Assembly (NCBI RefSeq): GCF_026571515.1
Contig: NW_026851604.1
Location: forward strand, 1 to 64,000
Direction of reading: 5' to 3'
Source: Ruditapes philippinarum
Taxonomy: Eukaryota
Length of the DNA stretch: 64,000 nt
In this document: piece after piece, positions 31,106 through 44,200 of the stretch
How positions within the stretch are numbered: the first letter of the stretch is position 1
Layout: each line of letters starts with the position of its first letter
Made by a program: the position numbers and the translations under genes
Notes under the pieces: generated by a model
Told to the model about the DNA's origin: nothing
The model's input: only the letters and a program-made list of their open reading frames with translations
Database searches by the model: none

Positions 31106-31910
31106 TCCTGGAATACAGAAAATAGAAGTTTTTATCACTATCTTCCTTTCTACTTTAAAGGTTATATTATTCAATTTGGCGCATATCGAAATTTTACTTA
31201 CATCTTAATTAACCACAAATGAAAAACAATTTATGTGTTTTGCTTAATCGATCGCTGTGTAGCATTTTAATTTTCCAATGAAAAAGAAATATCTCATTTG
31301 ACTTGTGACCTTAATTTTTGATATTTAAAAAAAACAATATCTGCTTTACACTGCAAACAAATAATTCTATTTCTTATGTATTAATATTGGTAACCAATCG
31401 ATAAAATTTAATTGGACAAAGTTGTTGTGTTAACCGATATTAATCGTATTCATTAAAGTATCAACAATCAATAAATCAATTAAACTCTTTAATGAACACC
31501 GATCATAATTAAATAATAAACGTACACATTAAAAAAATCATGATTCTAGTGACAATAGTATGACTGTGAATCACTAATATAGCCAAATAACAACAATACA
31601 ACATACGCTTTCTTAAGTAAAGGGACGCAATTTCACACTATTTGTACAGCTTTACAGTACAAGGTAGACTCCCTTTATCAAGAAAAAAACTACGTCAAAA
31701 AGTAAGTTATAAGTTTTACATATCGCATGTAACATTACAATAATGTGGGCGGGGCAACGCTCGACTTTTTACTTTTCTAATTCCAATTCAGATGCGTCTC
31801 ACAAATGTAAGCTAATAATATACAATAAAGAGAAAATGGTATGATTTATTTCCTTATTTTTTCTCCGATAGTTTATGTAAAAACGCGAGGACACAAAAAG
31901 ACTTTTTCTT

Positions 31911-32075
31911 ACCTTTTGCAGTTATTTATTGTATCTATATTATTATCCGACCTTTACACGATTAAAATGAATTACATGTAATTGGTTGTTCTTCTTGAAA
32001 CTGACCTACAAGTTTTCGGCATAGATTAATTAAACTTCCTTTCTCCGAAAAAGTTTATAGATAGCATGTTCTAGT
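31911..32075 (-). promoter_or_regulatory. Putative non-coding first exon/core promoter module A of the TRIM-like gene
   Basis: Minus-strand donor AAG|GTAAGA at 31912 could splice to acceptor TTCCAG 2 nt before the ATG. Conserved TTCTCCGAA and TTATAGATAG block; orthologous block at 54298-54450. Confidence 0.5.
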
Positions 32076-33597
32076 TTTTGCGCAAGGGTAGTTATGCATT
32101 TTATAATGTCGCTTATTAAATTTAAAAGTCATCTCCCTTTATAAATGATGTTAATAGTATAGAGAAGTTATGCAAACTGTACTTCATTTGGATGTTACGC
32201 AAATTCTCATCTGGAAATATGTTCAAGTATAAGTAATTATGTTTTTTAATGATATGAATTATGACAATTGATTGATATTATGACTATTTCTGATGAAATT
32301 ATAACACAGCTAAACATTGACAAAAAACATGCCAAACAATGTTTTGCTATGTCAAATTGTATTTATTTACCTTAAACATGCACTATGAGCGTCAAGAAAT
32401 CAGTATGGTTAACAAAGATATATTGACATTAGCATCAAGGGTAATATATTGCCAAATATGAATAAAGTCTTATACCATGACTGTATGATTTCTTGCAACG
32501 CAACTGCCTGACCCCTTGCAAGTTTAATAAATAAATGTGTATGACTTCTTGTTAGTTTCTAGGACTCTTACAATATATAGACTATATTGAGTACAGCATG
32601 AATTTGCTATGGAAACGCAATTTTCAACTTAATCGTTATTTGTTTCAATTAAGTTTAATTTCTATAATTTTATATGATGATTTATCTATCCTTTGTCCAT
32701 TTATCTATACTATATCCTTTGTCCATGATCAAATTTGAAATCAACAAAACCTGAATAATACAAAATGATTTCGCCGGAAGTGATACAACTTCATTTTAGT
32801 CACGTAGTGATCTCGAAAGATTTCATATATATTTATCTTAAAAGTAAGTTTCAGAGAAAATATCTTATGAATTTGCAAGAAAACATACAATATGGATATA
32901 ACACTTGTATCACATTTCGAGCATACATTGTATCTAAACGAATGTCGTGAACTCGCTTCAATTCAGAATAAATAATTAACTGAAAATAAAAATAAACTGC
33001 GTACATCTGCCATTCTTTAGGTGAATAAAAACAAAATTTGAAACCAGTCCGGTATACATTTCGTGTTAATATGTGCCGATGATGAAACTTGATTTTATGA
33101 AAACTGCGCTGGTTGGGATGCGAAACTTGCATAGATAATAAGGAGAATTCCCTTAAGAAAAAATAGCATACATCAACCACAGAAAATTATCATTTTTAAC
33201 GTTCAGCTTGCAACATCCAAATGATAATACAAAGCATTTATAAATCCGCTTACCTTCTGTGTATCTTGTAAATTTGTTCGCATTTTGCCATATTAAGACT
33301 TGTGCAAACAAAGGTTTAGCAAATCATCATAATGGTAGAACTAGTGATAAATTAAAGACAATTAAACAGTCAAACATCGTACGCTTTCCCGATCCTGTGA
33401 TGTATTAAAATGTAATATTGCAGGATATAAATGCTTCATTCATCAAACTGTTTCAATGACAGTCCTAAGCAAAGACCAGTTACATCCCCTTACAAAACAT
33501 TACGTGATTAATTTAATTTCCGCAGTATCTAGCATGTTTAAACACGTATAAATAATACATACAAAATTAAGTGTTTGTTTAAAATATAGATTATCTT

Positions 33598-33800
33598 ACC
33601 TGTTTTCAAGTATAACTATACAGCATGCCAGATAAAAACATTCCAAACTTTTCAAGATTTAAACTTTATTAATTGTGAAACTTTTTTAAATATAAAATCT
33701 ACCTTTTTTAACAATTTAATGAAAAATAGTGACCTTAATGCTGAATGCCGCAGATTAACTTCCTTTCGTGGAAAACGTCTATAAATAGCATGTCCTAAAT
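33598..33800 (-). promoter_or_regulatory. Putative alternative first exon/core promoter module B
   Basis: Donor CAG|GTAAGA at 33599; TTCGTGGAA at 33765; CTATAAATAG at 33779. Confidence 0.45.
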
Positions 33801-34529
33801 TTAATTTTATGTTATCACAGATTTATCTCCCATTATGCTGAGTGATCTTAAGTATAGAAAAGTTGTCATTAGATTAAATTGGTCACCTGTTTAAAGCACA
33901 GACATTTGCGGTGTTGAGCTCCCAACTCCTTAAAAAATCAAATAAAATGTATATTTGTTAATACCGGCGCATATAACTTTTTAAAACTGACATACAATTT
34001 TTGGCCTTTCATTTCTCGAAAACTTATATAAATCCTAGTTTTTTGGCAAGGTAATTTTTTAATTTTTGTCGCTCATTATATTTTAAAGTTATCTCCCTTG
34101 ATAAATAATGATAATTATTAAGTTTGTCAAATCGAGAAGTTATACATCAATTGGTGATCATCCAAGTGTTGCAACCTGAAAAAGGGAATAAGTAATTATA
34201 TTTTCTAATGATGTGAATAATTATTGATGTATTTTATGACTATTCCTGATGGAATTATAGCACAGCGAATAACTGATAGGAAACGTGCTGAGTAAGTATT
34301 GGCATTCATTGACACACAATATTCAAACCTTTAACATGCACTTTATTTAAAATCAAACCAGTATTGTTAACAAATATATATTTGCCAGCTGCTCCACGGG
34401 ACGTATTGTGACAAAAGCATTAAAATTTTGGGCAAAGTGTTGGACCATGACCGTATGATTTCTTGCAACGACACTGTATGACATCGTCCGAGTTAAAAAA
34501 ATAATGTGCATGAATTCTTGCGAGTTTGT

Positions 34530-34739
34530 TTGTTTGTTTCATTTTACGCCTTTTCCCAACAGTATTTCAGTTATATAGGCGGGTAGTTTCCTTACCATCG
34601 TTCCTAGAGAGTAACACCAGTACTAGACTAGCTTCCTCTGCGTTAAACTACCAAAGCGTCTCCCTGGGATCGAACCCACTCCAGAGAGGTAATTGGATTA
34701 GAAGTCATCGACTCTAACCTCTTGACCACGGCGGCGGTT
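34530..34739 (-). mobile_element. tRNA-derived SINE
   Basis: A box TGGTCAAGAGG, B box GGTTCGATCCC, (AAAC)n tail, 12-bp TSD TTGCGAGTTTGT. The paralogous site near 42655 is empty. Confidence 0.85.
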
Positions 34740-35969
34740 TTGCGAGTTTGTAGGACTCTGACAAAGAAATGACACTATAAAGAGTGCAATATGAATTTGA
34801 TATGGAAAGTTTGTACTTATCTTATCTTATCTTAATTCATATCATTTAATCAAATAATGATATATATATCAGAAAATCACATGGTGCATATACTAAAACT
34901 TCATTTGTTATATCATAAAATAAAAACATCGACAGTGCATCAAGGAATGCTAAGAAAATATAATTTCTGAACACTCTTGTTAACATGACTGCATGGCCTC
35001 GTGAGACTTCAGCGAATAAATTGCATTACATCTTGCGCTTGATAGCAACCATTAAGAAACCCCATCGTTGTTTGTTTAAATTAACTCAAATTCCTATATA
35101 TCTTAAAACCTGAAAGTTACCAAATGGCTTCGCTGGGAGTGATACAACTTGTTTTAGACACCACTTGAACTAGTAAGATATCATATATATAGCTAGCAAG
35201 AAAACAAATCAGATGATTTCTTATGAGTTTGCAAGAAAATATACAATATTGATCTTACACGTGTGGCACATTTCCAGAATTTATTCAAGAATATAAATGA
35301 TTTTCTTTTCGGAAAATATAATAGATAAAAAGGTTATATATTACAAAATGAATTGCGTACATCTAGCATGCTTTTCGTGAATAAATTCCAAATCAGAAAC
35401 CGGTCCGACACAAATTTCGTGTTTTGTGCCAATGGTAAAACTTAATTTCAAGAAAACTGCACTAGATTGGTTGTGAAACAGACATATTCAATAAAGAAAA
35501 GGTACAATCATACATCAATAACTAACAAATTTGTGATTGTTTGCAATATTCGAATGAGGACATTTCGTTAATCCGTTTATCCACAGTGTTTCTTGTAAAT
35601 TTATACATATGTTGTCATATTTTAAAATAGCCCAAATAAAGATTCAGCAAAGTATTTTAATGATAGGGCTTGTGATAAATAAAGGCCGATTAAACAGCCA
35701 TACCTCATATGCTCAAAGATTCTGTGAATATTTAATTGTTATATGGCAGGAAGTAAAATGTTTCATGAATCGAACGGTTCAGATTGAATCAAACTGTTCA
35801 GATAACAGTCCTAAAATATATTACCAGTTACATCCCCTGACGTTACGTTACTTGATTCATGAAATATTTTACTCCTTAACTGAGTGAATTGCTTATCGTT
35901 TTAGCATGTTTAAACCCTTTAACGATATACAAAGTAAAGTGTATATTAAAAGTATTGTTTACCTTTCCT

Positions 35970-36533
35970 GTTGTAGGAGATAAAAAAGCCTAATTAGGGG
36001 TTTGTTACTCCTACGTAGGACTTTTAAACTCCTAATAAGGATTTTTTTATCTCCTACGTAGGAGTTATAAAGTCCTACGTAGGAGTTAAAAAGTCCTACG
36101 TAGGAGTTTAAAAGTCCTACGTAGGAGTTATAAACTCCTAATTAGGCTTTTTTATCTCCTACGTAGGAGTTTAAAAGTCCTACGTAGGAGTTATAAAATC
36201 CTACGTAGGACTTATAAAGTCCTACGTTGGAGATATAAAGTCCTACGTAGGAGTTTAAAAGTCCTACGTAGGAGTTATAAATTCCTAATTAGGCTTTTTT
36301 TTATCTCCTACGTAGGAGTTATAAAGTCCTACGTAGGAGATACAAAGTCCTACGTAGGACTTATAAAGGTTTACATAGGAGTTATAAAGTCCTACGTAGG
36401 ACTTACAAAGTCCTACGTAGGAGTTTAAAAGTCCTACGAAGGAGTTACAAACTCCTAATTTGGTTTTTTATCTCCTATGTAGGAGTTTATTTTTATATAG
36501 AACATTATGAATTGGCACCAGGTCGCTTCCGTA
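35970..36533. repeat. Satellite-like array of ~21-bp units built on the palindrome TCCTACGTAGGA, probably the interior of a DNA transposon
   Basis: More than 20 units with a periodic CCTAATTAGGC variant; ends GGCACCAGGTCGCTTCCGTA. Confidence 0.85.
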
Positions 36534-36593
36534 AGTATGACTGTAAATCACTAATATAGCCAAATAACAACAATACAACATACGCTTTCTTAA

Positions 36594-37390
36594 GGTATGA
36601 GCCCCCTAATGGGCACTATAAAGAACTATAAAATTGACAGCTTAGGTCTGTTATATACCTTAAAGGACACCTGTATGCAAAATCTAAAGAAAGTTTACCA
36701 TATGGTTTTCAAGGTATGGTGATTTTTCTTACTGAAAACTTGGCTACTGAAACGGCTCTTTTTCAGAAATGAGAAACTTTCAATAATCTATCATATAATC
36801 AATATGGAAAAATATGTTCCATTTGACCATTGCTAAGAAACAAATAATAGCATTCAACAAGCAAATGACACAAGAAAACTTAGTGTTTCTATTCAAGATA
36901 TTTGAAATATGTATACAAATGGTACCCTACCCCACCAATTTTAAACCCTTGATTAACAATTTTCCTACTTGGAGCGCCTTATTAAAAAAAGCCTTAAAAT
37001 TTACCAAAATGAGGGACTGTTTTCAAAGTTTGCCTTAATTGTTTTATAGTATACTGGTTACTGGTTAATCTTGTCAAATATAAAATACTTTTACCGTCTA
37101 GTTTTTATTTTATTAGACTTTGAAAATATCAGGTATCATATCTGATGATAAATTTGGCATAATTTAGCCATTAAATACCAATAATAATTTTATACTTAAA
37201 ATGAAACACTTTTTTCTTACCAAGAGTGATCCAAGAGACACAAAAAATGTTGAAAGAAAAAATAGAAAGAAAAAAAGTTGCCTCTTCTGGGGCTTGAACC
37301 CGCGCCCCTCAGCTTCAATGCAGTTGACAGTAGTTCTAGCCTATTTGAATACTCTTCAAAGTGGAGGTAATGCATTAGGTGGGTCATACC
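36594..37390. mobile_element. Kolobok-like non-autonomous DNA transposon (~800 bp)
   Basis: TTAA|GGTATGAGCCCCCTAATG ... CATTAGGTGGGTCATACC|TTAA. The empty TTAA site is visible in the paralog at ~31613. Confidence 0.9.
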
Positions 37391-38411
37391 TTAAGTAAAG
37401 GGACGCAATTTCACATTTGTAAAGCTTTCCAGTACAAGGCAGACATTCTTTATCAAGAAAAAAACTACGTCAAAAAGTAAGTTATAAGTTTAACATATCG
37501 CATAGTAACATTACAATAATGCTGTATTTCAAAAACAAGAGCAACTGCCGGGCGGGAGCAACGCTCGACTTTTTACTTTTCTAATTCCAATTCAGTTATG
37601 CGTCACACAAATGTAAGCTAGTAATATACAATAAAGAGAAAATGGTTTGATTTTTTTCCTTATCTTTTCACCGATAGTTTATGTAAAAACGCGAGGAAAC
37701 AAATATTAAGAAAGAGAAAGACTTTTTCTTACCTTTTGCAGTTATTTATTGTATCTATATTATTATCCGACCTTCACACGATTAAATGAATGAATTGAAT
37801 GTTCTTTTTGAAACTGACCTACAAGTTTTCGGCATAGATAAATTAAACTTCCTTTCTCCGGAAACGTTTATAAATAGCATGTTCTAGTTTTTGCGCAAGG
37901 GTAGTTATACATTTTATAATGTCGCTTATTAAATTTAAAAATCATCTCCCTTTATAAATGATGATAATACTATAGACAAGTTATGCAAACTGTATTTCAT
38001 TTTGACGTTACGCAAATTCTCATCTGGAAGTATGTTCAAGTGTAAGTATTTATGTTTTCTAATGATATGGATTATAACAATTGATTTATATTATGACTAT
38101 TTCTGATGAAATTATAACACAGCTAAACATTGACAGAAATCATACCAAACAATGTTTTGCTATGTCAAATTGTATTTATTTACCTTAAACATGCACTATG
38201 AGCGTCAAGAAATCAGTATGGTTAACAAAGATATATTGCCATTAGCATCAAGGGACACATATTGCCAAATCTGACTGCATGAATTTGTGTGACTCTAGCA
38301 ATTTAATATGCATTTCATCTTGCAAGCTTCTTCTGTGATTTCAACGCAATTTTCAACTCAATCGTTATTTGTTTCAATTAAGTTTAATTTCTATATAGTT
38401 TTATATGATGA

Positions 38412-38567
38412 TTTATCTATACGATATCCTTTGTCCATTTATCTATACTATATCCTTTGTCCATTTATCTATACTATATCCTTTGTCCATTTATCTATAC
38501 TATATCCTTTGTCCATTTATCTATACTACATCCTTTGTCCATTTATCTATACTATATCCTTTGTCCA
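38412..38567. repeat. 26-bp tandem repeat TCCATTTATCTATACTATATCCTTTG
   Basis: About 6 units here, about 2 at 32680-32727 and 1 at ~55265. Confidence 0.95.
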
Positions 38568-39559
38568 TGATCAACTTTGAAATTATCAAAACCTGAATAA
38601 TACAAAATGATTTCGCCGGCAGTGATATAACTTCGTTTTAGTCATTAAGTGATATCGAAAGATTCCATATATATTTATCCAAAAAGTTAGATTAAGATTA
38701 AAAAATAACTTATGAGTTTGCAAGAAAACATAAATATTGATATAACACTTGTATCGCATTTCGAGCATACTTTGTATCTAAACGAATGTCGTGAATCGCT
38801 TCAGTTCAGAAAATATAATTACATTTTGTACATGTAATTAACTGCAAGTATAACTGAATTGCATGCTATTTCATGAATAGAAACAAAATTTGAAATCAGT
38901 CCGATATACATGTCGTGTTATGTGCCGATAATAAAACTTGATTATAAAAAAACTGCACAGGTTTGGTTGTGAAACATGCATAGAGAATAAGAATTCTCTT
39001 AAGAAAAAGAACATACATCAACCACGAAAATTGGTCATTTTAAACGTTCAGCTTGCACCTTCTAAATGAGATACAAAGCATTTAAAAGTCCGTTAACCTT
39101 CTGTGTATCTAGTAAATTTGTTCACATGTTGCCATATCAAGAATAGTGCAAATAAAGATTTAGGAAATTATAATAATGAAAGGGCTAGTGATAGATACAG
39201 TTCAATTAAACAGCCAATCATCATAATACGCTCTCCAGATTCTATGAAATATTGTAATGAAATATTGCAGGATATAGTTCTTCAAACTGTTTCTATAACA
39301 GTCCCAAAATATGATGACGATACGTTACGTGTTTAATTAAATTTTCAACTCCTAAATTAGCTAAACTGCTTATCGATTAGGCATATTTAAACATGCTAAT
39401 AAAACATTTGTATATAAAATTAAGTGTATGTTTAAAGTATTGATTACCTTACCTGTGTTTTTACAGCTACATCTAACTATACAGCAATCCAGATTAAACC
39501 ATTTAACTTAAGTAAAGTAATTATAAAGTCTACCTTTCCAAAATTTTATGAAATATGAA

Positions 39560-40686
39560 AAACAAGATCAACAAGGAAAGGCGGCGTTCAATGAAAGCAA
39601 CCCCCATATGACCCAGCAACAAGAACCAATGGCAAGGAGCCCAGGCGGACCCCAAACATAAAAAGGACAGGGCAACGACACGTTAAACATTAAATGATAA
39701 ATAATTTGTAACTGATTAGGAATTCAAAGAAAAAAATAATAGGCCCACAAAGGGGAAGGGGACAGGAGACCGGGGGAAGGGGGGGGGGGTAATCAAAGAA
39801 ATAAAAACTAGAGGCAATGGGGAAGATACTTACCGTAGACGAGAAAACAACAAGGGACACAGGCAAAAGTGTCACCAAAACAGTATGAAACAACATAGAC
39901 ATACATCTGAGGAACACAGTGGGGCGCCGCCTTGGAACGGTCAGCAGCATAATAATGACTGCTGGGGAGTTTAAACCGGTTAATGGTGCACCAAACCTCG
40001 CTCTTAGCCCCACCATGTTCCTATAAACGAGACAGTGTAAATAAAATGAATCCCCGCCAAGTGAAATTCTAACAGTTGTCATGGTTACAAAAGGTTAAAT
40101 AAATAAAACACTAAAATGATCATGTAGAAACATATAAAAGTAAACCCAATGACCATAACAAAAGTACTCAATGTCCTAACGGAAGACAGAGCAACAAGAA
40201 AATCACCTACAAGGGCCCGACGAAGCAAGGCAGAAGACGAACATTAAGACAATTCAGACCCAAAGGGCTTTACGAACTATCCATCATAGAGTCTCCCACT
40301 TGGTCCGTCAGATGCAATCAAAAGAGGAAAGCGTAGTGTCCAACTGTAAAAGGGTTGAACACTAAACATGCAGTATGTCTTAAAATAGTAGGGTCATAAC
40401 CTCTTTTAATAAAACGTTTAATAATTTTAGTAAAAACAGCAGAAAAATTACCATGACCCAAAATCTTACGAAGTTTGTAAACCACATCGCCATAAAAACC
40501 AGGCTGGCTAATCCCTTGTCGCAGAAGAGTTTTTAAATCACTATTGAATTTAGAAATTAAATCAAAGTTACGATTGTAAAATTTAGTAAAATATTTCCGT
40601 AATTTATGATAGCGGTAGCCCTGTTTTAGAAGCTTGCTGGTAATAAAAATATTCCGCTCGTTGAAATCCTTTACGTTGTTACAAGC
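39560..40686 (-). mobile_element. 3' fragment of a Penelope-like retroelement, Naiad-type (RT thumb/C-terminus plus 3' UTR)
   Basis: Frame 40686->40270 reads ACNNVKDFNERNIFITSKLLKQGYRYHKLRKYFTKFYNR...FYGDVVYKLRKI...TACLVFNPFTVGHYAFLF(TGA)LHLTDQVGDSMMDSS*. No C-terminal GIY-YIG follows. Absent from the paralogous module near 33700. Confidence 0.8.
40233..40296 (-). promoter_or_regulatory. SECIS-like stem-loop (type 2), one core mismatch
   Basis: GGAGAC UCU AUGA U GGAUAGUUCG U AAA GCCC UUU GGGU C UGAAUUGUCU U AA U GUUC GUCUUC. Helix I, 10-bp helix II, apical AAA and ministem all form; the 3' core is UAAU instead of UGAU. Confidence 0.75.
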
Positions 40687-41146
40687 TGTCAGTTTCTGTC
40701 AGCTGTCGAGAAGTTTCTGTCGCCCTTTCACAAAATCTGATTTCAGTTTTACTTAAGAAAAAGAAAGAAAAAAAAAGTTTTACTTAAAATCTGATTTTAC
40801 TAGATACACAGAAACTTCTCGAACAGTGACCTTCAAGCTGAATACAGCAGATTAACTTCCTTTCGTTGAAAACGTCTATAAATAGCATATCCTAAATTAA
40901 AGTTAATTTTGTCGTCTGTATCATACTTGTCTCGATATGTACAATGAATAGCGAACTGGAGAATTTCGCAATGCAAACATTTTCAAATGAAATCACCTTT
41001 TCCGTCAATAAATCGCGCTCTTCGGGGGTTTTTATTTATCATTTTGTAGCACACAGTGGGTTATTATGGTATGTTATTCCGAAAGCTGTAAATAGAATGA
41101 TGAGTTGATGACCTAAATATTCCGAAAATCTATTTATAGAGGGATG

Positions 41147-41257
41147 TACTCCTATCGGTAATTCCCGGTCTCTCCTGGTCTATTTTGACCGGGATTTACT
41201 AGTGACCGGCGAATAGTACCACACGTTTATTGTCCGGTCTCTCCCGGTTTTGGAGTA
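41147..41257. mobile_element. Small MITE-like element with TACTCC...GGAGTA ends
   Basis: Short TIR with TA flanks and internal CCGGTCTCTCC repeats. Confidence 0.45.
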
Positions 41258-44200
41258 GATGTTTGAGATCGTTACAGAACAGAACAAATACTTTACAGAT
41301 AAATAAGCTTTTTTTCAAAATGAATGTTTGTCACTTAGTTTGGTTAAAATAATTAATAAACACAGATCAACTCTCAAATTTATTGATTATTATTATACAT
41401 AAACATACAATTCGAATAAAAACAAAAAAAAACCAACACAAATCGCATGTTTTATTTTATCTATATGAGATCAAAACAATAAATATGTACAATAATTGAG
41501 AAAAAATGTACATTTTTATGGCATTTATATGACACTATCAACTTTGAAACATTTTATTTAATTTGTTATTCGTGTTTAGTAAAGATGCCGAGGAATTATT
41601 CAAAGTTACAAATCAGATTTTATGAATTATTCAATTGATTGATAATTTAAAAAATGATAAAGAAAAATACAAATGTACATGTATATGGTTTAAGAATAAA
41701 CAATATTATATATTGAAAGATTAACCATAGTTTACTGACTTTTTCCAGTTAAGTTTTGACTTAATTATAATCGTCGGTCAATATGACAATTGAATTCTTA
41801 AAATAGTAGTAAACGTAAAAACTCAGTATTAAAATAGCGCATAAAACACAAAAAAGAAAAGAAAACAATGTTCATAAAATCTGTATTTTTTTTATTTAAA
41901 TAAATATTACAAATATTGTATAATAAATAATCATGCTCAACATGATCAACATGGAAATAATACAAGTGTCATATTGTTACTAAGTGTGAACAGATACCTT
42001 AAGAGGGAGTCTTCGCTAATAGCGATAACATAATAAGGGACAATTACACAAGTGTGGTGTTGATCATGCGTTACACATATGGATTATAAATGATTGTATA
42101 CATGTATATCCGTTGCTATTAATAACCACGATCATAAAGAAATAACAAGTAATATTCTAATTTCTAGCATGCCAATCAAAGTTATAAGTAATGAACAATG
42201 TCTTTCGTCCGTTCATTCATAAGTGATATACAATTCTGGTAAAAACCAATGAACCATTGAACAGTTTATAAGAATATCTTGTCATCAAATATCTACTAGT
42301 TCATCTGCACCTGCTGCATTTCTTGCTTGGACGCCCTTTGATGCTTTGCATCAATGCTTTTCTTGTGTATCAATTTGTTATAAACCGGATGTTGCGAGCT
42401 GACCGAGAGTAGGCTAAGCTATTATGTTTCCTAATGATATGAATAACAATTGATTTATATACTATTTCTGATGGAGTTTTAGCGCAAGGAAAAGCAACTC
42501 GGTATTCTTCACAGATATATTTGCCAGTAATGCCGACGGACGCATATTGACAAAATCATTAAAATTCTGAGCAAAGTGTAAAACTATGACTGTATGATTT
42601 CTTGTAACGACACTGTATGACCTCTTACGAGCTTAAAACTAAATGTGTATGATTTCTTGCGAGTTTCTAGGACTCTGAAAAAGAAAATGTGACTTTAAAG
42701 ATTACAATATGAATTTAATATGGAAAGTTTCGAGTTACAAAACTAATCTTAATTTGTATCATTGAATCAAATAATAAATTATATCAGAAAATCACATGGT
42801 GCATATACTAAAAATTCATTGGTTACATCTTACAATGTGTGAAATAAAAAAAATCGACAGTGCATCAAGGAAAGCTTAGAGAATCTGAAATTCTGAACAA
42901 TCTTAGTAAGATGACTGCATGGCCTCTTTCGACTACAGCAAATAAATTGCATTACATCTTGCGTTCGATAGCAACCATTAAGAAACACCATCGTTATTTG
43001 TTTAAATTAACTCAAATGTTTATTATGATATATCTAATTGTCCATTATTAAAACCTGAAAAATACCAAATGGTTTCGCCGGAAGTGATACAGCTTATTTT
43101 AGACACCACTTGGACTCGTAAGATATCATATATAGAGCTAGCAAGAAAGAATCAGATGATTTCTTATGAGTTTGCAAGAAAATATACAATATTGATTTTA
43201 CACATGTGGCACATTTCCAGAATTTATTCAAGAAAATAAATGATTTTCTTGTCGGAAAATATAATAGAAAAAAAGGTTATATATTATAAAATGAATTGAT
43301 GCTTTCGTGAATAAAAAACCAAATCTGAAACCAGCCCGACACATATTTCGTGTTTTGTGCCAATGATAAAACTTAATTTCAAGAAAACTGCACTAGATGG
43401 GTTGTGAAACAGACATATTCAATAAAGAAAAAGTACATACATCAATAACTAACAAATTTGTGATTGTTTGCAACATCCGAATGAGGACATCTCGTTAATC
43501 CGTTTATCTACTGTGTATATTGTAAATTCATTCATATGCTGTCATATTAAGAATAGCGCAAATAAAGATTCAGCAAAGTATTTTAATGATAGGGCCTGTG
43601 ATAATTAAAGGCCGATTAAACAGCCATACCTCATATGCTCAAAGAATATTCTGTGAATATTTAATTGTTATATGGCAGGATGTAAAATGTTTCATGAATC
43701 AAACTGTTCAGATTGAATCAAACTGTTCAGATAACAGTCCCAAAATACATTACCAGTTGCATCCCCTGACGTTACGTTACTTGATTTATGAAATGTTTTA
43801 CTCCTAAATTGAGTAAATGGGTTATCGTTTTAGCATGTTTAAACCCGTTAACGATACACAAAGTAAAGTGTATATTAAAAAAAAGCTGTTCAGTGTACAT
43901 TATGCTTTTGTCGATTTATAACAGTTTATCTATTGACTGATTTGTACAATTTGTACATTTCAAAAGCTGTATAAAATTGATATTAATTGAAGGCACATAA
44001 TACCTCAGAAACAAATGTGAGTTCAGTAATATTCAAATAATGGCTAAGACCATGTAACAAGCTTATCATCTGCAGAAAGAATGTGCTTTTTTGTTGTTGT
44101 TTTTTTGCCTTAAATGTAATTAAAGTAGTATAAAGATTTCCATACCTAAATTCTAAATCACTAAAGCTATATTAATTGCCAAACCGCAACAGAAGCACAA

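What the first reader, a model, noticed from the sequence alone, without database searches (positions are those of the whole stretch)
40233..40686. Penelope-like (Naiad-type) retroelement carrying a SECIS that overlaps its own ORF end, with an in-frame TGA
Seen: a minus-strand RT-thumb-like frame missed by the ORF track runs 40686->40270, interrupted only by a TGA at 40318-40320. Its last codons (GDSMMDSS*) are the 5' arm of a type-2 SECIS: helix I GGAGAC/GUCUUC, AUGA, 10-bp helix II, apical AAA, GCCC/GGGU ministem. The TAA stop supplies the apical adenosines. Known: Naiad PLEs have an N-terminal GIY-YIG and a C-terminal RT, and clam and spider Naiads were reported to encode selenoproteins. 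Inference: this is a relic of a selenocysteine-dependent retrotransposon. The 3' core reads UAAU rather than UGAU (position 40245), so this copy is either mutated or a variant. The TGA is only ~30 nt from the core, closer than mammalian recoding normally allows, so it may be the true stop or an indel artefact.
Basis: partly seen in the sequence, partly recalled or inferred. Interest (0 to 1): 0.85.

Follow-up and report, generated by a model that had tools for sequence, protein, structure and literature searches.

The report
Selenocysteine retrotransposon with odd SECIS core
The window holds a dead fragment of a very abundant Penelope-like (Naiad) retrotransposon that needs selenocysteine to make its protein. 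Its selenocysteine signal (SECIS) lacks a base thought to be indispensable, yet the family has spread to over a thousand copies while keeping its protein under selection.

Summary
Window 40687-39551 (minus strand) is a 5'-truncated 1,137-bp insertion of a 4.25-kb Naiad-type Penelope-like element, with more than 1,000 copies at 98-99% identity.

Longer copies show an N-terminal GIY-YIG nuclease and a telomerase-like RT. They carry five internal in-frame TGA codons; four sit where relatives have Cys or TGA.

The hairpin at 40234-40295 is a genuine SECIS. The same structure sits at the same place in 31 related metagenome loci, with strong covariation.

The TGA at 40318-40320 is probably the real stop, because the closest relatives have TAG there.

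The UAAU core is not a private mutation. The genome holds 1,041 copies of the AA form against 3 of the GA form, whereas all 28 distinct relatives have G.

Variants shared between subfamilies are mostly synonymous (32 S : 12 N, against 81 : 156 for singletons). The protein was therefore still under selection after the G-to-A change. I infer that this non-canonical SECIS probably still works (about 55%).

Selenoprotein Naiads in clams are already published (Craig et al. 2021). The AA core, the Sec codon in the CxC motif and the wide spread are new. Other first-reader notes of this scan flagged the same kind of element elsewhere in this genome.

The parts
39551..40687 (-). 5'-truncated copy (1,137 bp) of a ~4,246-bp Naiad-type Penelope-like retroelement
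   Evidence: 29 other copies align over 40687->~39551 at 98-99% identity and continue further 5' with variable truncation points. A paralogous empty site lies at 33687-33727.
40321..40686 (-). Last 122 codons of the element's ORF, the C-terminal thumb/CTE-like domain after the RT core
   Evidence: Translation. A phmmer search gave 14,183 hits, best at 73% identity. The AlphaFold model of the closest uninterrupted relative (76% identical) matches telomerase RTs best, E 1e-9.
40318..40320 (-). TGA, codon ~1058 of the full ORF; probably the working stop codon
   Evidence: Conserved in 14 of 14 copies. It aligns to TAG in the closest relatives L076/L077 and to Asn, Gly, Ala and others in more distant ones. 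It lies only 30 nt from the SECIS core.
40270..40317 (-). Former 16-codon ORF tail (15 codons plus TAA), now the 5' flank and 5' arm of the SECIS
   Evidence: Homologues keep a tail of the same length ending ...SDSMMxPT. The DSMM codons spell the AUGA core.
40234..40295 (-). SECIS hairpin, type with apical ministem; extended helix I spans 40226-40302
   Evidence: Rfam RF00031 33.2 bits. The clade model R1 gives 61.5 bits, E 3.6e-12, although this hit was one of the 15 sequences used to build R1. Fold. Covariation.
40284..40287 (-). 5' core AUGA
   Evidence: UGA is invariant in the 15-sequence alignment.
40243..40246 (-). 3' core UAAU, with A at 40245 where all relatives have G
   Evidence: Exact 25-mer counts in the genome are 1,041 for AA and 3 for GA. 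53 of 54 fetched copies read TAAT. All 28 distinct relatives have NGAN.
40258..40258 (-). Private A->U change of this copy in the ministem (GGGA -> GGGU)
   Evidence: All 29 other copies have A here.
39551..40233 (-). Rest of the element's 3' UTR, about 680 nt including a C-rich tract
   Evidence: Aligned end to end with the other copies. Rfam gave only weak chance-level snoRNA hits in this stretch (E 3.2 and 9.8) and no further hit in other copies at E<=1.
40688..40819 (.). About 132 bp of palindromic filler at the 5' junction of the insertion
   Evidence: Absent from the paralogous empty site and not part of the repeat.

Best explanation
SHOWN: the window carries a dead, 5'-truncated insertion of a young, very abundant Naiad-type Penelope-like retrotransposon. 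The unit is ~4,246 bp and copies often lie in head-to-tail partial tandems. Its single ORF of ~1,057 codons encodes an N-terminal GIY-YIG nuclease and a telomerase-like RT. It contains five internal in-frame TGA codons: before the GIY motif, at the first Cys of CCHH, at the first Cys of CxC, eight residues after DKA, and in RT6(D). Every copy that covers a given site has TGA there. The 3' end carries a SECIS that is conserved and covaries across the clade. It overlaps the ancestral end of the ORF, so the TAA sits in its apical loop. INFERRED: the mRNA is translated by SECIS-dependent, processive recoding of the five UGAs as selenocysteine. The sixth TGA (window 40318-40320), 30 nt from the core, acts as the stop (about 80%). 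INFERRED, about 55%: the family-wide G->A in the 3' core gives an A.A pair instead of A.G at k-turn position 2b.2n, and this does not abolish function. The AA-core lineage produced more than 1,000 insertions, and it diversified into subfamilies almost only by synonymous changes. The window copy itself does nothing: it lacks about 3.1 kb of the 5' end.
For: Copy number and truncation: 2,419 candidates for the 3' 500 bp against 575 for a 5' segment, with variable 5' ends. Unit and tandems. Architecture and TGA positions. The nuclease region, read with X at the TGAs, aligns to canonical PLE GIY-YIG domains of the same genome at E 2.7e-15, and both X align to Cys. TGA conservation: u1 5/5, u2 5/5, u3 23/23, u4 34/34; u4-u6 in all 26 copies that span the RT region. 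Sec/Cys alternation in relatives: DKA+8 is TGA in close relatives and TGT/TGC in distant ones; CxC is mixed. SECIS: Rfam hits at the homologous site in 17 related loci, two above the gathering score; the clade model finds 31 loci plus the window. Base pairing is 91% against 67-70% in shuffles and 38-53% with slid partners, and 14/17 and 16/17 pairs show double changes. SECIS is found with TGA in 17 of 23 loci, against 2 of 14 Cys-only loci. AA fixed. Selection: in the RT region shared variants are 26 S: 11 N against 59: 117 for singletons (p 7e-5); for variants in 4 or more copies, 14 S: 1 N; haplotypes are linked. The N-terminal region gives 6: 1 against 22: 39. The result holds in the subset chosen without regard to the 3' end, 20: 9 against 46: 88. 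Precedent: a k-turn with A at 2n is bound by L7Ae (PMC3985660), and SBP2 has an L7Ae-type domain (PMC1874613). The published clam Naiads have the same layout (PMC8557442).
Against: The G.A/A.G tandem is reported as needed for SBP2 binding and essential for Sec incorporation (PMC1874613). SECISearch3 discards candidates without GA-AG (PMC3753652). The selection test rests on 54 copies taken from the best-scoring matches. It assumes the G->A change happened once, before the subfamilies split. Pfam does not recognise the family's own protein pieces. The species is unknown.
Confidence: 0.55

Rival explanations
1. Same Sec-dependent Naiad family, but the G->A change killed the SECIS. The AA copies were then made by proteins supplied in trans by another Naiad or PLE family. 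The coding signal would be inherited from before the change.
For: Textbook requirement for the G.A/A.G tandem. Every one of 28 distinct relatives keeps G. PLE-dependent non-autonomous elements exist (retrozyme preprint listed). Many other PLEs are present in this genome.
Against: All subfamilies carry AA, yet they differ almost only by synonymous changes. Pure trans-mobilisation would not produce that pattern. Only 3-7 GA-type copies exist, so there is no sizeable GA sibling lineage. The 130 best matches to a divergent homologue all belong to this one family.
Confidence: 0.27
2. The core is restored at the RNA level. A-to-I editing of the first A of UAAU gives UIAU, which mimics UGAU, in the mRNAs that are translated.
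For: The target A has a 5' U and sits in a long imperfect hairpin. The 3 GA copies could descend from edited templates. This is speculative and no data were obtained here.
Against: If edited RNAs were also the templates for reverse transcription, many GA copies would be expected; the count is 3 in 1,044. Inosine lacks the N2 amino group used in a sheared G.A pair (own knowledge). No reads could be examined.
Confidence: 0.07
3. The hairpin is not a SECIS. It would be a 3'-end structure used for something else, such as RT recognition, and the TGAs would simply be inactivating mutations.
For: The Rfam score of this family is 33 bits, below the gathering score of 35. The 3' core is non-canonical.
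Against: Relatives score up to 38.8 bits with a canonical core. AUGA, the apical AAA and NGAN are conserved while the helices covary. The internal stops conserved across the family's copies are all TGA, and four of the five sit at Cys/TGA-alternating positions. TAA or TAG turns up only in single copies (1 of 26). The hairpin tends to occur together with TGA codons.
Confidence: 0.03

Closest known systems
Naiad_Mmer, selenoprotein-encoding Naiad of the clam Mercenaria mercenaria (Craig et al. 2021, PMC8557442)
   Same: N-terminal GIY-YIG plus RT. UGA at the Cys before GIY, at the first Cys of CCHH and 8 aa after DKA. The SECIS overlaps the first non-UGA stop, and a UGA just upstream is thought to act as the stop.
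   Different: This family has two more UGAs, in CxC and RT6(D). Its terminal UGA lies 22 nt before the Rfam hit rather than 7 bp before the SECIS. Its 3' core is AA, which SECISearch3 would discard, whereas the published one is grade A. The published consensus was not available for direct comparison, and the species here is unknown.
Naiad_Scon of the razor clam Sinonovacula constricta (same paper)
   Same: It has four UGAs, including the one at a weakly constrained RT6(D) position, which this family shares.
   Different: In Naiad_Scon the SECIS lies 1-21 bp after a UAA or UAG stop. No UGA in CxC is reported. Its core is canonical.
Canonical eukaryotic SECIS (Rfam RF00031; core UGAN/KGAW)
   Same: Helix I, internal loop, AUGA, a 10-bp helix II, apical AAA and a ministem, located in the 3' part of a UGA-containing mRNA.
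   Different: The G of the 3' GA is replaced by A in all copies. The 5' arm is former coding sequence.
Kt-23 k-turn of Thelohania solenopsae (PMC3985660)
   Same: [quoted passage not shown]
   Different: It is a ribosomal k-turn, not a SECIS, and binding was shown with archaeal L7Ae, not SBP2. My mapping of the SECIS G onto position 2n is my own inference.
Selenoprotein P mRNAs (multi-UGA recoding; up to 132 UGAs in molluscs, cited in PMC8557442)
   Same: Processive decoding of several UGAs on one mRNA in bivalves.
   Different: Selenoprotein P is a host gene that generally has two SECIS elements (own knowledge). Here there is one hairpin on a mobile element.

Membership tests
Naiad clade of Penelope-like elements | GIY-YIG nuclease placed N-terminal to the RT in one ORF | tested here: met
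   Reading of a near full-length copy. The nuclease region aligns to PF01541-positive PLE nucleases at E 2.7e-15. The RT lies downstream in the same frame.
Naiad clade of Penelope-like elements | CX2-5CxxC motif upstream of GIY-YIG, and a CCHH motif inside it (these separate Naiad from Chlamys) | tested here: met
   CNSKRCGCC is present. The Cys before GIY and the first Cys of CCHH are TGA codons that align to Cys in canonical PLE nucleases.
Naiad clade of Penelope-like elements | KR-rich block, CxC motif, GxKF/Y motif, and DKA instead of DKG | tested here: met
   A KR-rich stretch, U-D-C (CxC with Sec first), GPKY and PADKA are read. The list of features is from PMC8557442.
Naiad clade of Penelope-like elements | PLE-type, telomerase-like RT, with a longer A-to-B spacing (IFD) | tested here: met
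   The model of the closest uninterrupted relative (pLDDT 86.5) matches TERT structures first, E 1.3e-9. About 70 residues separate YDFSTLY from GIPMG. Pfam RVT_1 is only sub-threshold, and only in distant relatives. No tree against reference PLE clades was made.
Naiad clade of Penelope-like elements | 5' truncation, partial tandems (pseudo-LTR), body of 3.4-4.4 kb, no canonical hammerhead | tested here: met
   Variable 5' ends. Head-to-tail tandems with a 4,246-bp period. No hammerhead or twister hit at E<=1 in two 10-kb loci.
Eukaryotic SECIS (RF00031) | Hairpin with helix I, internal loop, helix II and apical A-rich loop, supported by covariation | tested here: met
Eukaryotic SECIS (RF00031) | Core quartet with tandem G.A/A.G (5' UGA, 3' GA) | tested here: not met
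   The 5' AUGA is present, but the 3' side reads UAAU in this copy and in 1,041 copies. Relatives do meet this feature.
Eukaryotic SECIS (RF00031) | Score at or above Rfam's gathering threshold (35 bits) | tested here: not met
   33.2 bits here and 31.9-33.0 in other copies. Relatives L075 (38.8) and L081 (37.5) pass.
Eukaryotic SECIS (RF00031) | Directs Sec insertion at upstream UGA | not testable with these tools
   Only indirect evidence: purifying selection downstream of the UGAs.
Selenoprotein gene | In-frame UGA aligned to Cys (or UGA) in homologues, with conserved coding sequence downstream | tested here: met
   Four of the five internal TGAs align to Cys or TGA. The fifth, in RT6(D), aligns mostly to Ser. 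Homology continues past every TGA.

The most novel reading that the evidence does not exclude
A natural eukaryotic SECIS in which the supposedly invariant G of the 3' GA is an A (an A.A pair at k-turn position 2b.2n) still drives processive decoding of five UGA codons in a recently active retrotransposon. If so, the host's SECIS-binding protein tolerates this core. Standard SECIS finders, which discard anything without GA-AG, would then be blind to a class of working elements and to the selenoproteins they serve.
Probability: 0.5. Interest if true: 0.85.

Novelty: new variant of a known kind. Interest (0 to 1): 0.62.

Why it matters
Selenoprotein-encoding transposons are known from only four Naiad families, in two clams and two spiders. 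This case adds three things.

- A family with five Sec codons, one of them in the diagnostic CxC motif.
- Evidence from 31 metagenome loci that a covarying SECIS at the ORF end, together with Sec/Cys switching, is widespread in this clade.
- A natural experiment on the SECIS core. The G that textbooks treat as essential is A in over a thousand young copies whose protein still shows purifying selection.

If the AA hairpin works, the rules for SECIS recognition and for selenoprotein prediction need widening. Thousands of dispersed SECIS-bearing 3' fragments like the one in this window would also be raw material for new host selenoproteins. If it does not work, the family is a clear case of a coding element kept moving in trans. 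A simple reporter assay would settle which is true.

Tried and rejected
- **5' end misread, then corrected.** I first took L002 position 243 as the element's 5' end. That was the truncation point of L002 itself.
- **Apparent frameshift.** The frameshift in L002 is private to that copy.
- **PF01541 genome search.** It returned canonical C-terminal-nuclease PLEs, not this family.
- **Pfam on the family's own pieces.** No hit.
- **PDB sequence-profile search with the RT alignment.** No hit.
- **Viral contigs.** No relatives found.
- **Constraint on the SECIS among subfamilies.** The first test was biased by how the copies were chosen. In the unbiased subset the signal is weak: 4 shared variants against about 10 expected.
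- **Second SECIS or ribozyme.** Neither was found in the unit.
- **Consensus.** I built none. Real copies served as references throughout.

Full report
**1. Observation**

On the minus strand, window 40686->40270 translates as one frame of 139 codons. The only internal stop is TGA at 40318-40320, and the frame ends ...GDSMMDSS at TAA 40270-40272. The mechanical ORF list shows only a 55-aa piece there.

Rfam's eukaryotic SECIS model matches 40234-40295 (-) end to end at 33.2 bits (gathering score 35), E 4.7e-4 for the 3 kb searched. AUGA is at 40287-40284. The 3' core reads UAAU, with A at 40245. The TAA codon sits in the apical loop, and the TGA lies 30 nt before AUGA.

**2. What the stretch is**

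The region 40687->39551 is one copy of a repeat. The 3' 500 bp has 2,419 candidate matches in the 1.41-Gb assembly, and the best 40 are 99-100% identical. Twenty-nine fetched copies align over the whole 1,137 bp at 98-99% identity. They continue further 5' to different end points, the pattern of a retroelement truncated during reverse transcription. A 5' segment has only 575 candidates.

Tandem copies on two contigs give a unit of 4,246 bp, preceded directly by the 3' part of another copy. This is the pseudo-LTR arrangement.

Inside the window, a paralogous duplicated module at 33687-33727 shows the empty site. The insertion consists of the 1,137-bp fragment plus about 132 bp of palindromic filler at its 5' junction. 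The window copy is therefore a young, dead fragment.

**3. The protein**

A near full-length copy reads, in one frame:
- a CX4CxxC motif;
- a GIY-YIG nuclease with a CCHH motif;
- a KR-rich block;
- a CxC motif, then GPKY, then PADKA;
- RT motifs (YDFSTLY, GIPMGTNCAPL, RYLDD);
- the C-terminal domain seen in the window.

These are the diagnostic features of Naiads as published (PMC8557442).

Pfam does not recognise the family's own pieces, which are cut up by the TGAs. Three other tests do support the assignment. The nuclease region, read with X at the TGAs, aligns to canonical PLE GIY-YIG domains of the same genome at E 2.7e-15. Distant relatives hit RVT_1 below threshold. An AlphaFold model of the closest uninterrupted relative (76% identical, pLDDT 86.5) matches telomerase RTs first (E 1.3e-9), then group II intron RTs and retron RTs. 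That is what is expected of a PLE RT.

**4. In-frame TGAs**

The internal stops shared by the copies are all TGA; TAA or TAG appears only sporadically, in 1 of 26 copies spanning the RT region.

| Site | Codon | Position in the protein | Copies with TGA |
|---|---|---|---|
| u1 | ~138 | Cys before GIY | 5/5 |
| u2 | 149 | first Cys of CCHH | 5/5 |
| u3 | 438 | first Cys of CxC | 23/23 |
| u4 | 576 | 8 aa after DKA | 34/34 |
| u5 | 874 | RT6(D) | 14/14; 26/26 |
| u6 | 1058 | window 40318-40320 | 14/14; 26/26 |

In 80 related loci from marine metagenomes, the codons at these positions are as follows:
- DKA+8 is TGA in the closer relatives and TGT/TGC in the distant ones.
- CxC alternates between TGA and Cys.
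- u1 and u2 align to Cys in canonical PLE nucleases.
- u5 aligns mostly to Ser.

The positions u1, u2, u4 and u5 are exactly those reported for the clam families Naiad_Mmer and Naiad_Scon. u3 is additional.

**5. The last TGA**

At u6, most relatives have a sense codon (Asn, Gly, Ala and others). A tail of up to 16 codons follows, and its DSMM or YSMM codons spell the AUGA core. The two closest relatives have TAG at u6. Together with the 30-nt distance to the core, this makes u6 the probable working stop. The same argument was made for Naiad_Mmer. The SECIS 5' arm is thus former coding sequence.

**6. The hairpin is a real SECIS**

Rfam finds SECIS_1 at the homologous place, about 26 nt after the ...LF end, in 17 related loci. 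Two of them score above the gathering threshold. A clade-specific covariance model finds it in 31 loci plus the window. It finds none in the distant Cys-only relatives.

On the MAFFT alignment of 15 sequences, 91.3% of cells pair, against 69.9% in shuffles and 39-50% with slid partners. All ten helix II pairs show compensatory changes. The 29-sequence model alignment gives the same picture, although it is fitted to the model.

SECIS is found in 17 of 23 TGA-bearing loci and in 2 of 14 Cys-only loci. Of those two, L076 was scored Cys-only merely because its contig does not reach the u3 and u4 positions; it belongs to the same family as TGA-bearing L077. This count is not corrected for relatedness.

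**7. The core anomaly**

UGA of the 5' core, the apical AAA and the A of the 3' GA are invariant. The G of the 3' GA is present in all 28 distinct relatives and absent only in this family.

Within the genome, the exact 25-mer with AA occurs 1,041 times and the GA version 3 times. A shorter GA-type 17-mer occurs 7 times. Fifty-three of 54 fetched copies read TAAT, including members of every subfamily. The A is therefore the family's state. The handful of GA copies is about what random A->G change at 1% divergence would give.

**8. Does the AA family still code?**

I used a real copy as reference and built no consensus. Variants among 54 copies were split into singletons, which mostly arose after insertion, and variants shared by two or more copies, which were inherited from source lineages.

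| Region or subset | Singletons (S : N) | Shared (S : N) |
|---|---|---|
| RT region | 59 : 117 | 26 : 11 (Fisher p 7e-5) |
| RT region, variants in 4 or more copies | - | 14 : 1 |
| N-terminal region | 22 : 39 | 6 : 1 |
| Copies chosen by their 5' end only | 46 : 88 | 20 : 9 |

The shared variants form linked haplotypes. One subfamily is defined by eight synonymous changes and no replacement changes.

All these lineages share AA, so selection on the protein acted after the G->A change. It acted on sequence that lies downstream of four or five UGAs. The simplest reading is that recoding still works.

Published work says the G.A/A.G tandem is needed for SBP2 binding and Sec insertion (PMC1874613). 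SECISearch3 discards cores without it (PMC3753652). On the other side, a natural k-turn with A at position 2n is bound by an L7Ae-family protein (PMC3985660). The equivalence of the SECIS G with position 2n is my inference.

**9. Rivals**

- Dead SECIS with trans-mobilisation (about 27%). This is the main rival. It fits the textbook rule but not the synonymous bias, and it does not explain the lack of a GA sibling lineage.
- A-to-I editing that restores the core (about 7%). I could not test this.
- A non-SECIS hairpin (about 3%). This is nearly excluded.

**10. Comparison with what is known, and novelty**

Selenoprotein-encoding Naiads in clams and spiders were described in 2021, including a SECIS overlapping the first non-UGA stop.

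New here are the fixed AA core in an expanding family that is still under selection, the Sec codon in CxC (five Sec codons in all), and the breadth of the SECIS-bearing clade in marine metagenomes.

The species is unknown, so I cannot exclude that this genome belongs to one of the published species. The family differs from both published descriptions.

Other first-reader notes of this scan flagged the same kind of element on other pieces of this genome. Their twister-ribozyme leads were not seen in this family.

**11. Limits**

- There are no RNA, ribosome or protein data.
- There is no reference-clade phylogeny.

Noticed in passing
window 40688-40819: About 132 bp of palindromic or repeated filler sits between the truncated 5' end of the Naiad fragment and the resumed flank. 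It is absent from the paralogous empty site. It may be a template-switch product, or the 'tail' described for PLE insertions.
   Followed up: partly
window 31600-43900: Duplicated modules occur with start-to-start spacings of about 5.8 kb and 7.9 kb, at 80-96% identity. The Naiad fragment inserted into one module after the duplication. The empty site is at 33687-33727.
   Followed up: partly
window 35958-36533 and 38411-38568: There is a 21-bp tandem array (about 21 copies, internally palindromic) and a 26-bp tandem array (6 copies, 97% matches).
   Followed up: no
L149:1-2835, L139:1-2823, L153:1-2814 (metagenome contigs): Distant Naiad-like RTs with Cys instead of TGA continue in frame into a ubiquitin C-terminal hydrolase domain (PF00443, E 1.5e-26, scanned in L149). 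This could be a retroelement-protease fusion or a chimeric assembly.
   Followed up: no
L074:5411-6783 (G000 C7747): A 1.37-kb insertion interrupts a full-length copy. It contains two inverted ~103-bp segments that are 87% identical to the first 102 nt of the unit.
   Followed up: no
G000 C11137:14602-14853 and C13351:173158-173403: Two GIY-YIG (PF01541) matches carry one in-frame TGA each. The fetched 7-kb loci L041 and L042 around them showed no match to this family's RT pieces. Other PLE lineages in this genome may also use Sec.
   Followed up: partly
G000 C581:18430, 23089, 27778; C4632:1505, 5755; C4612:117010, 121264: There are runs of two or three copies of the family spaced 4.25-4.7 kb apart, that is, tandem arrays rather than single insertions.
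   Followed up: partly
table, for example G000 C14803:45209-45919 and C8512:18155-18865: Some copies show only one TGA, instead of two, across the stretch covering u5 and u6. I could not read them to see which codon changed, or to what.
   Followed up: no
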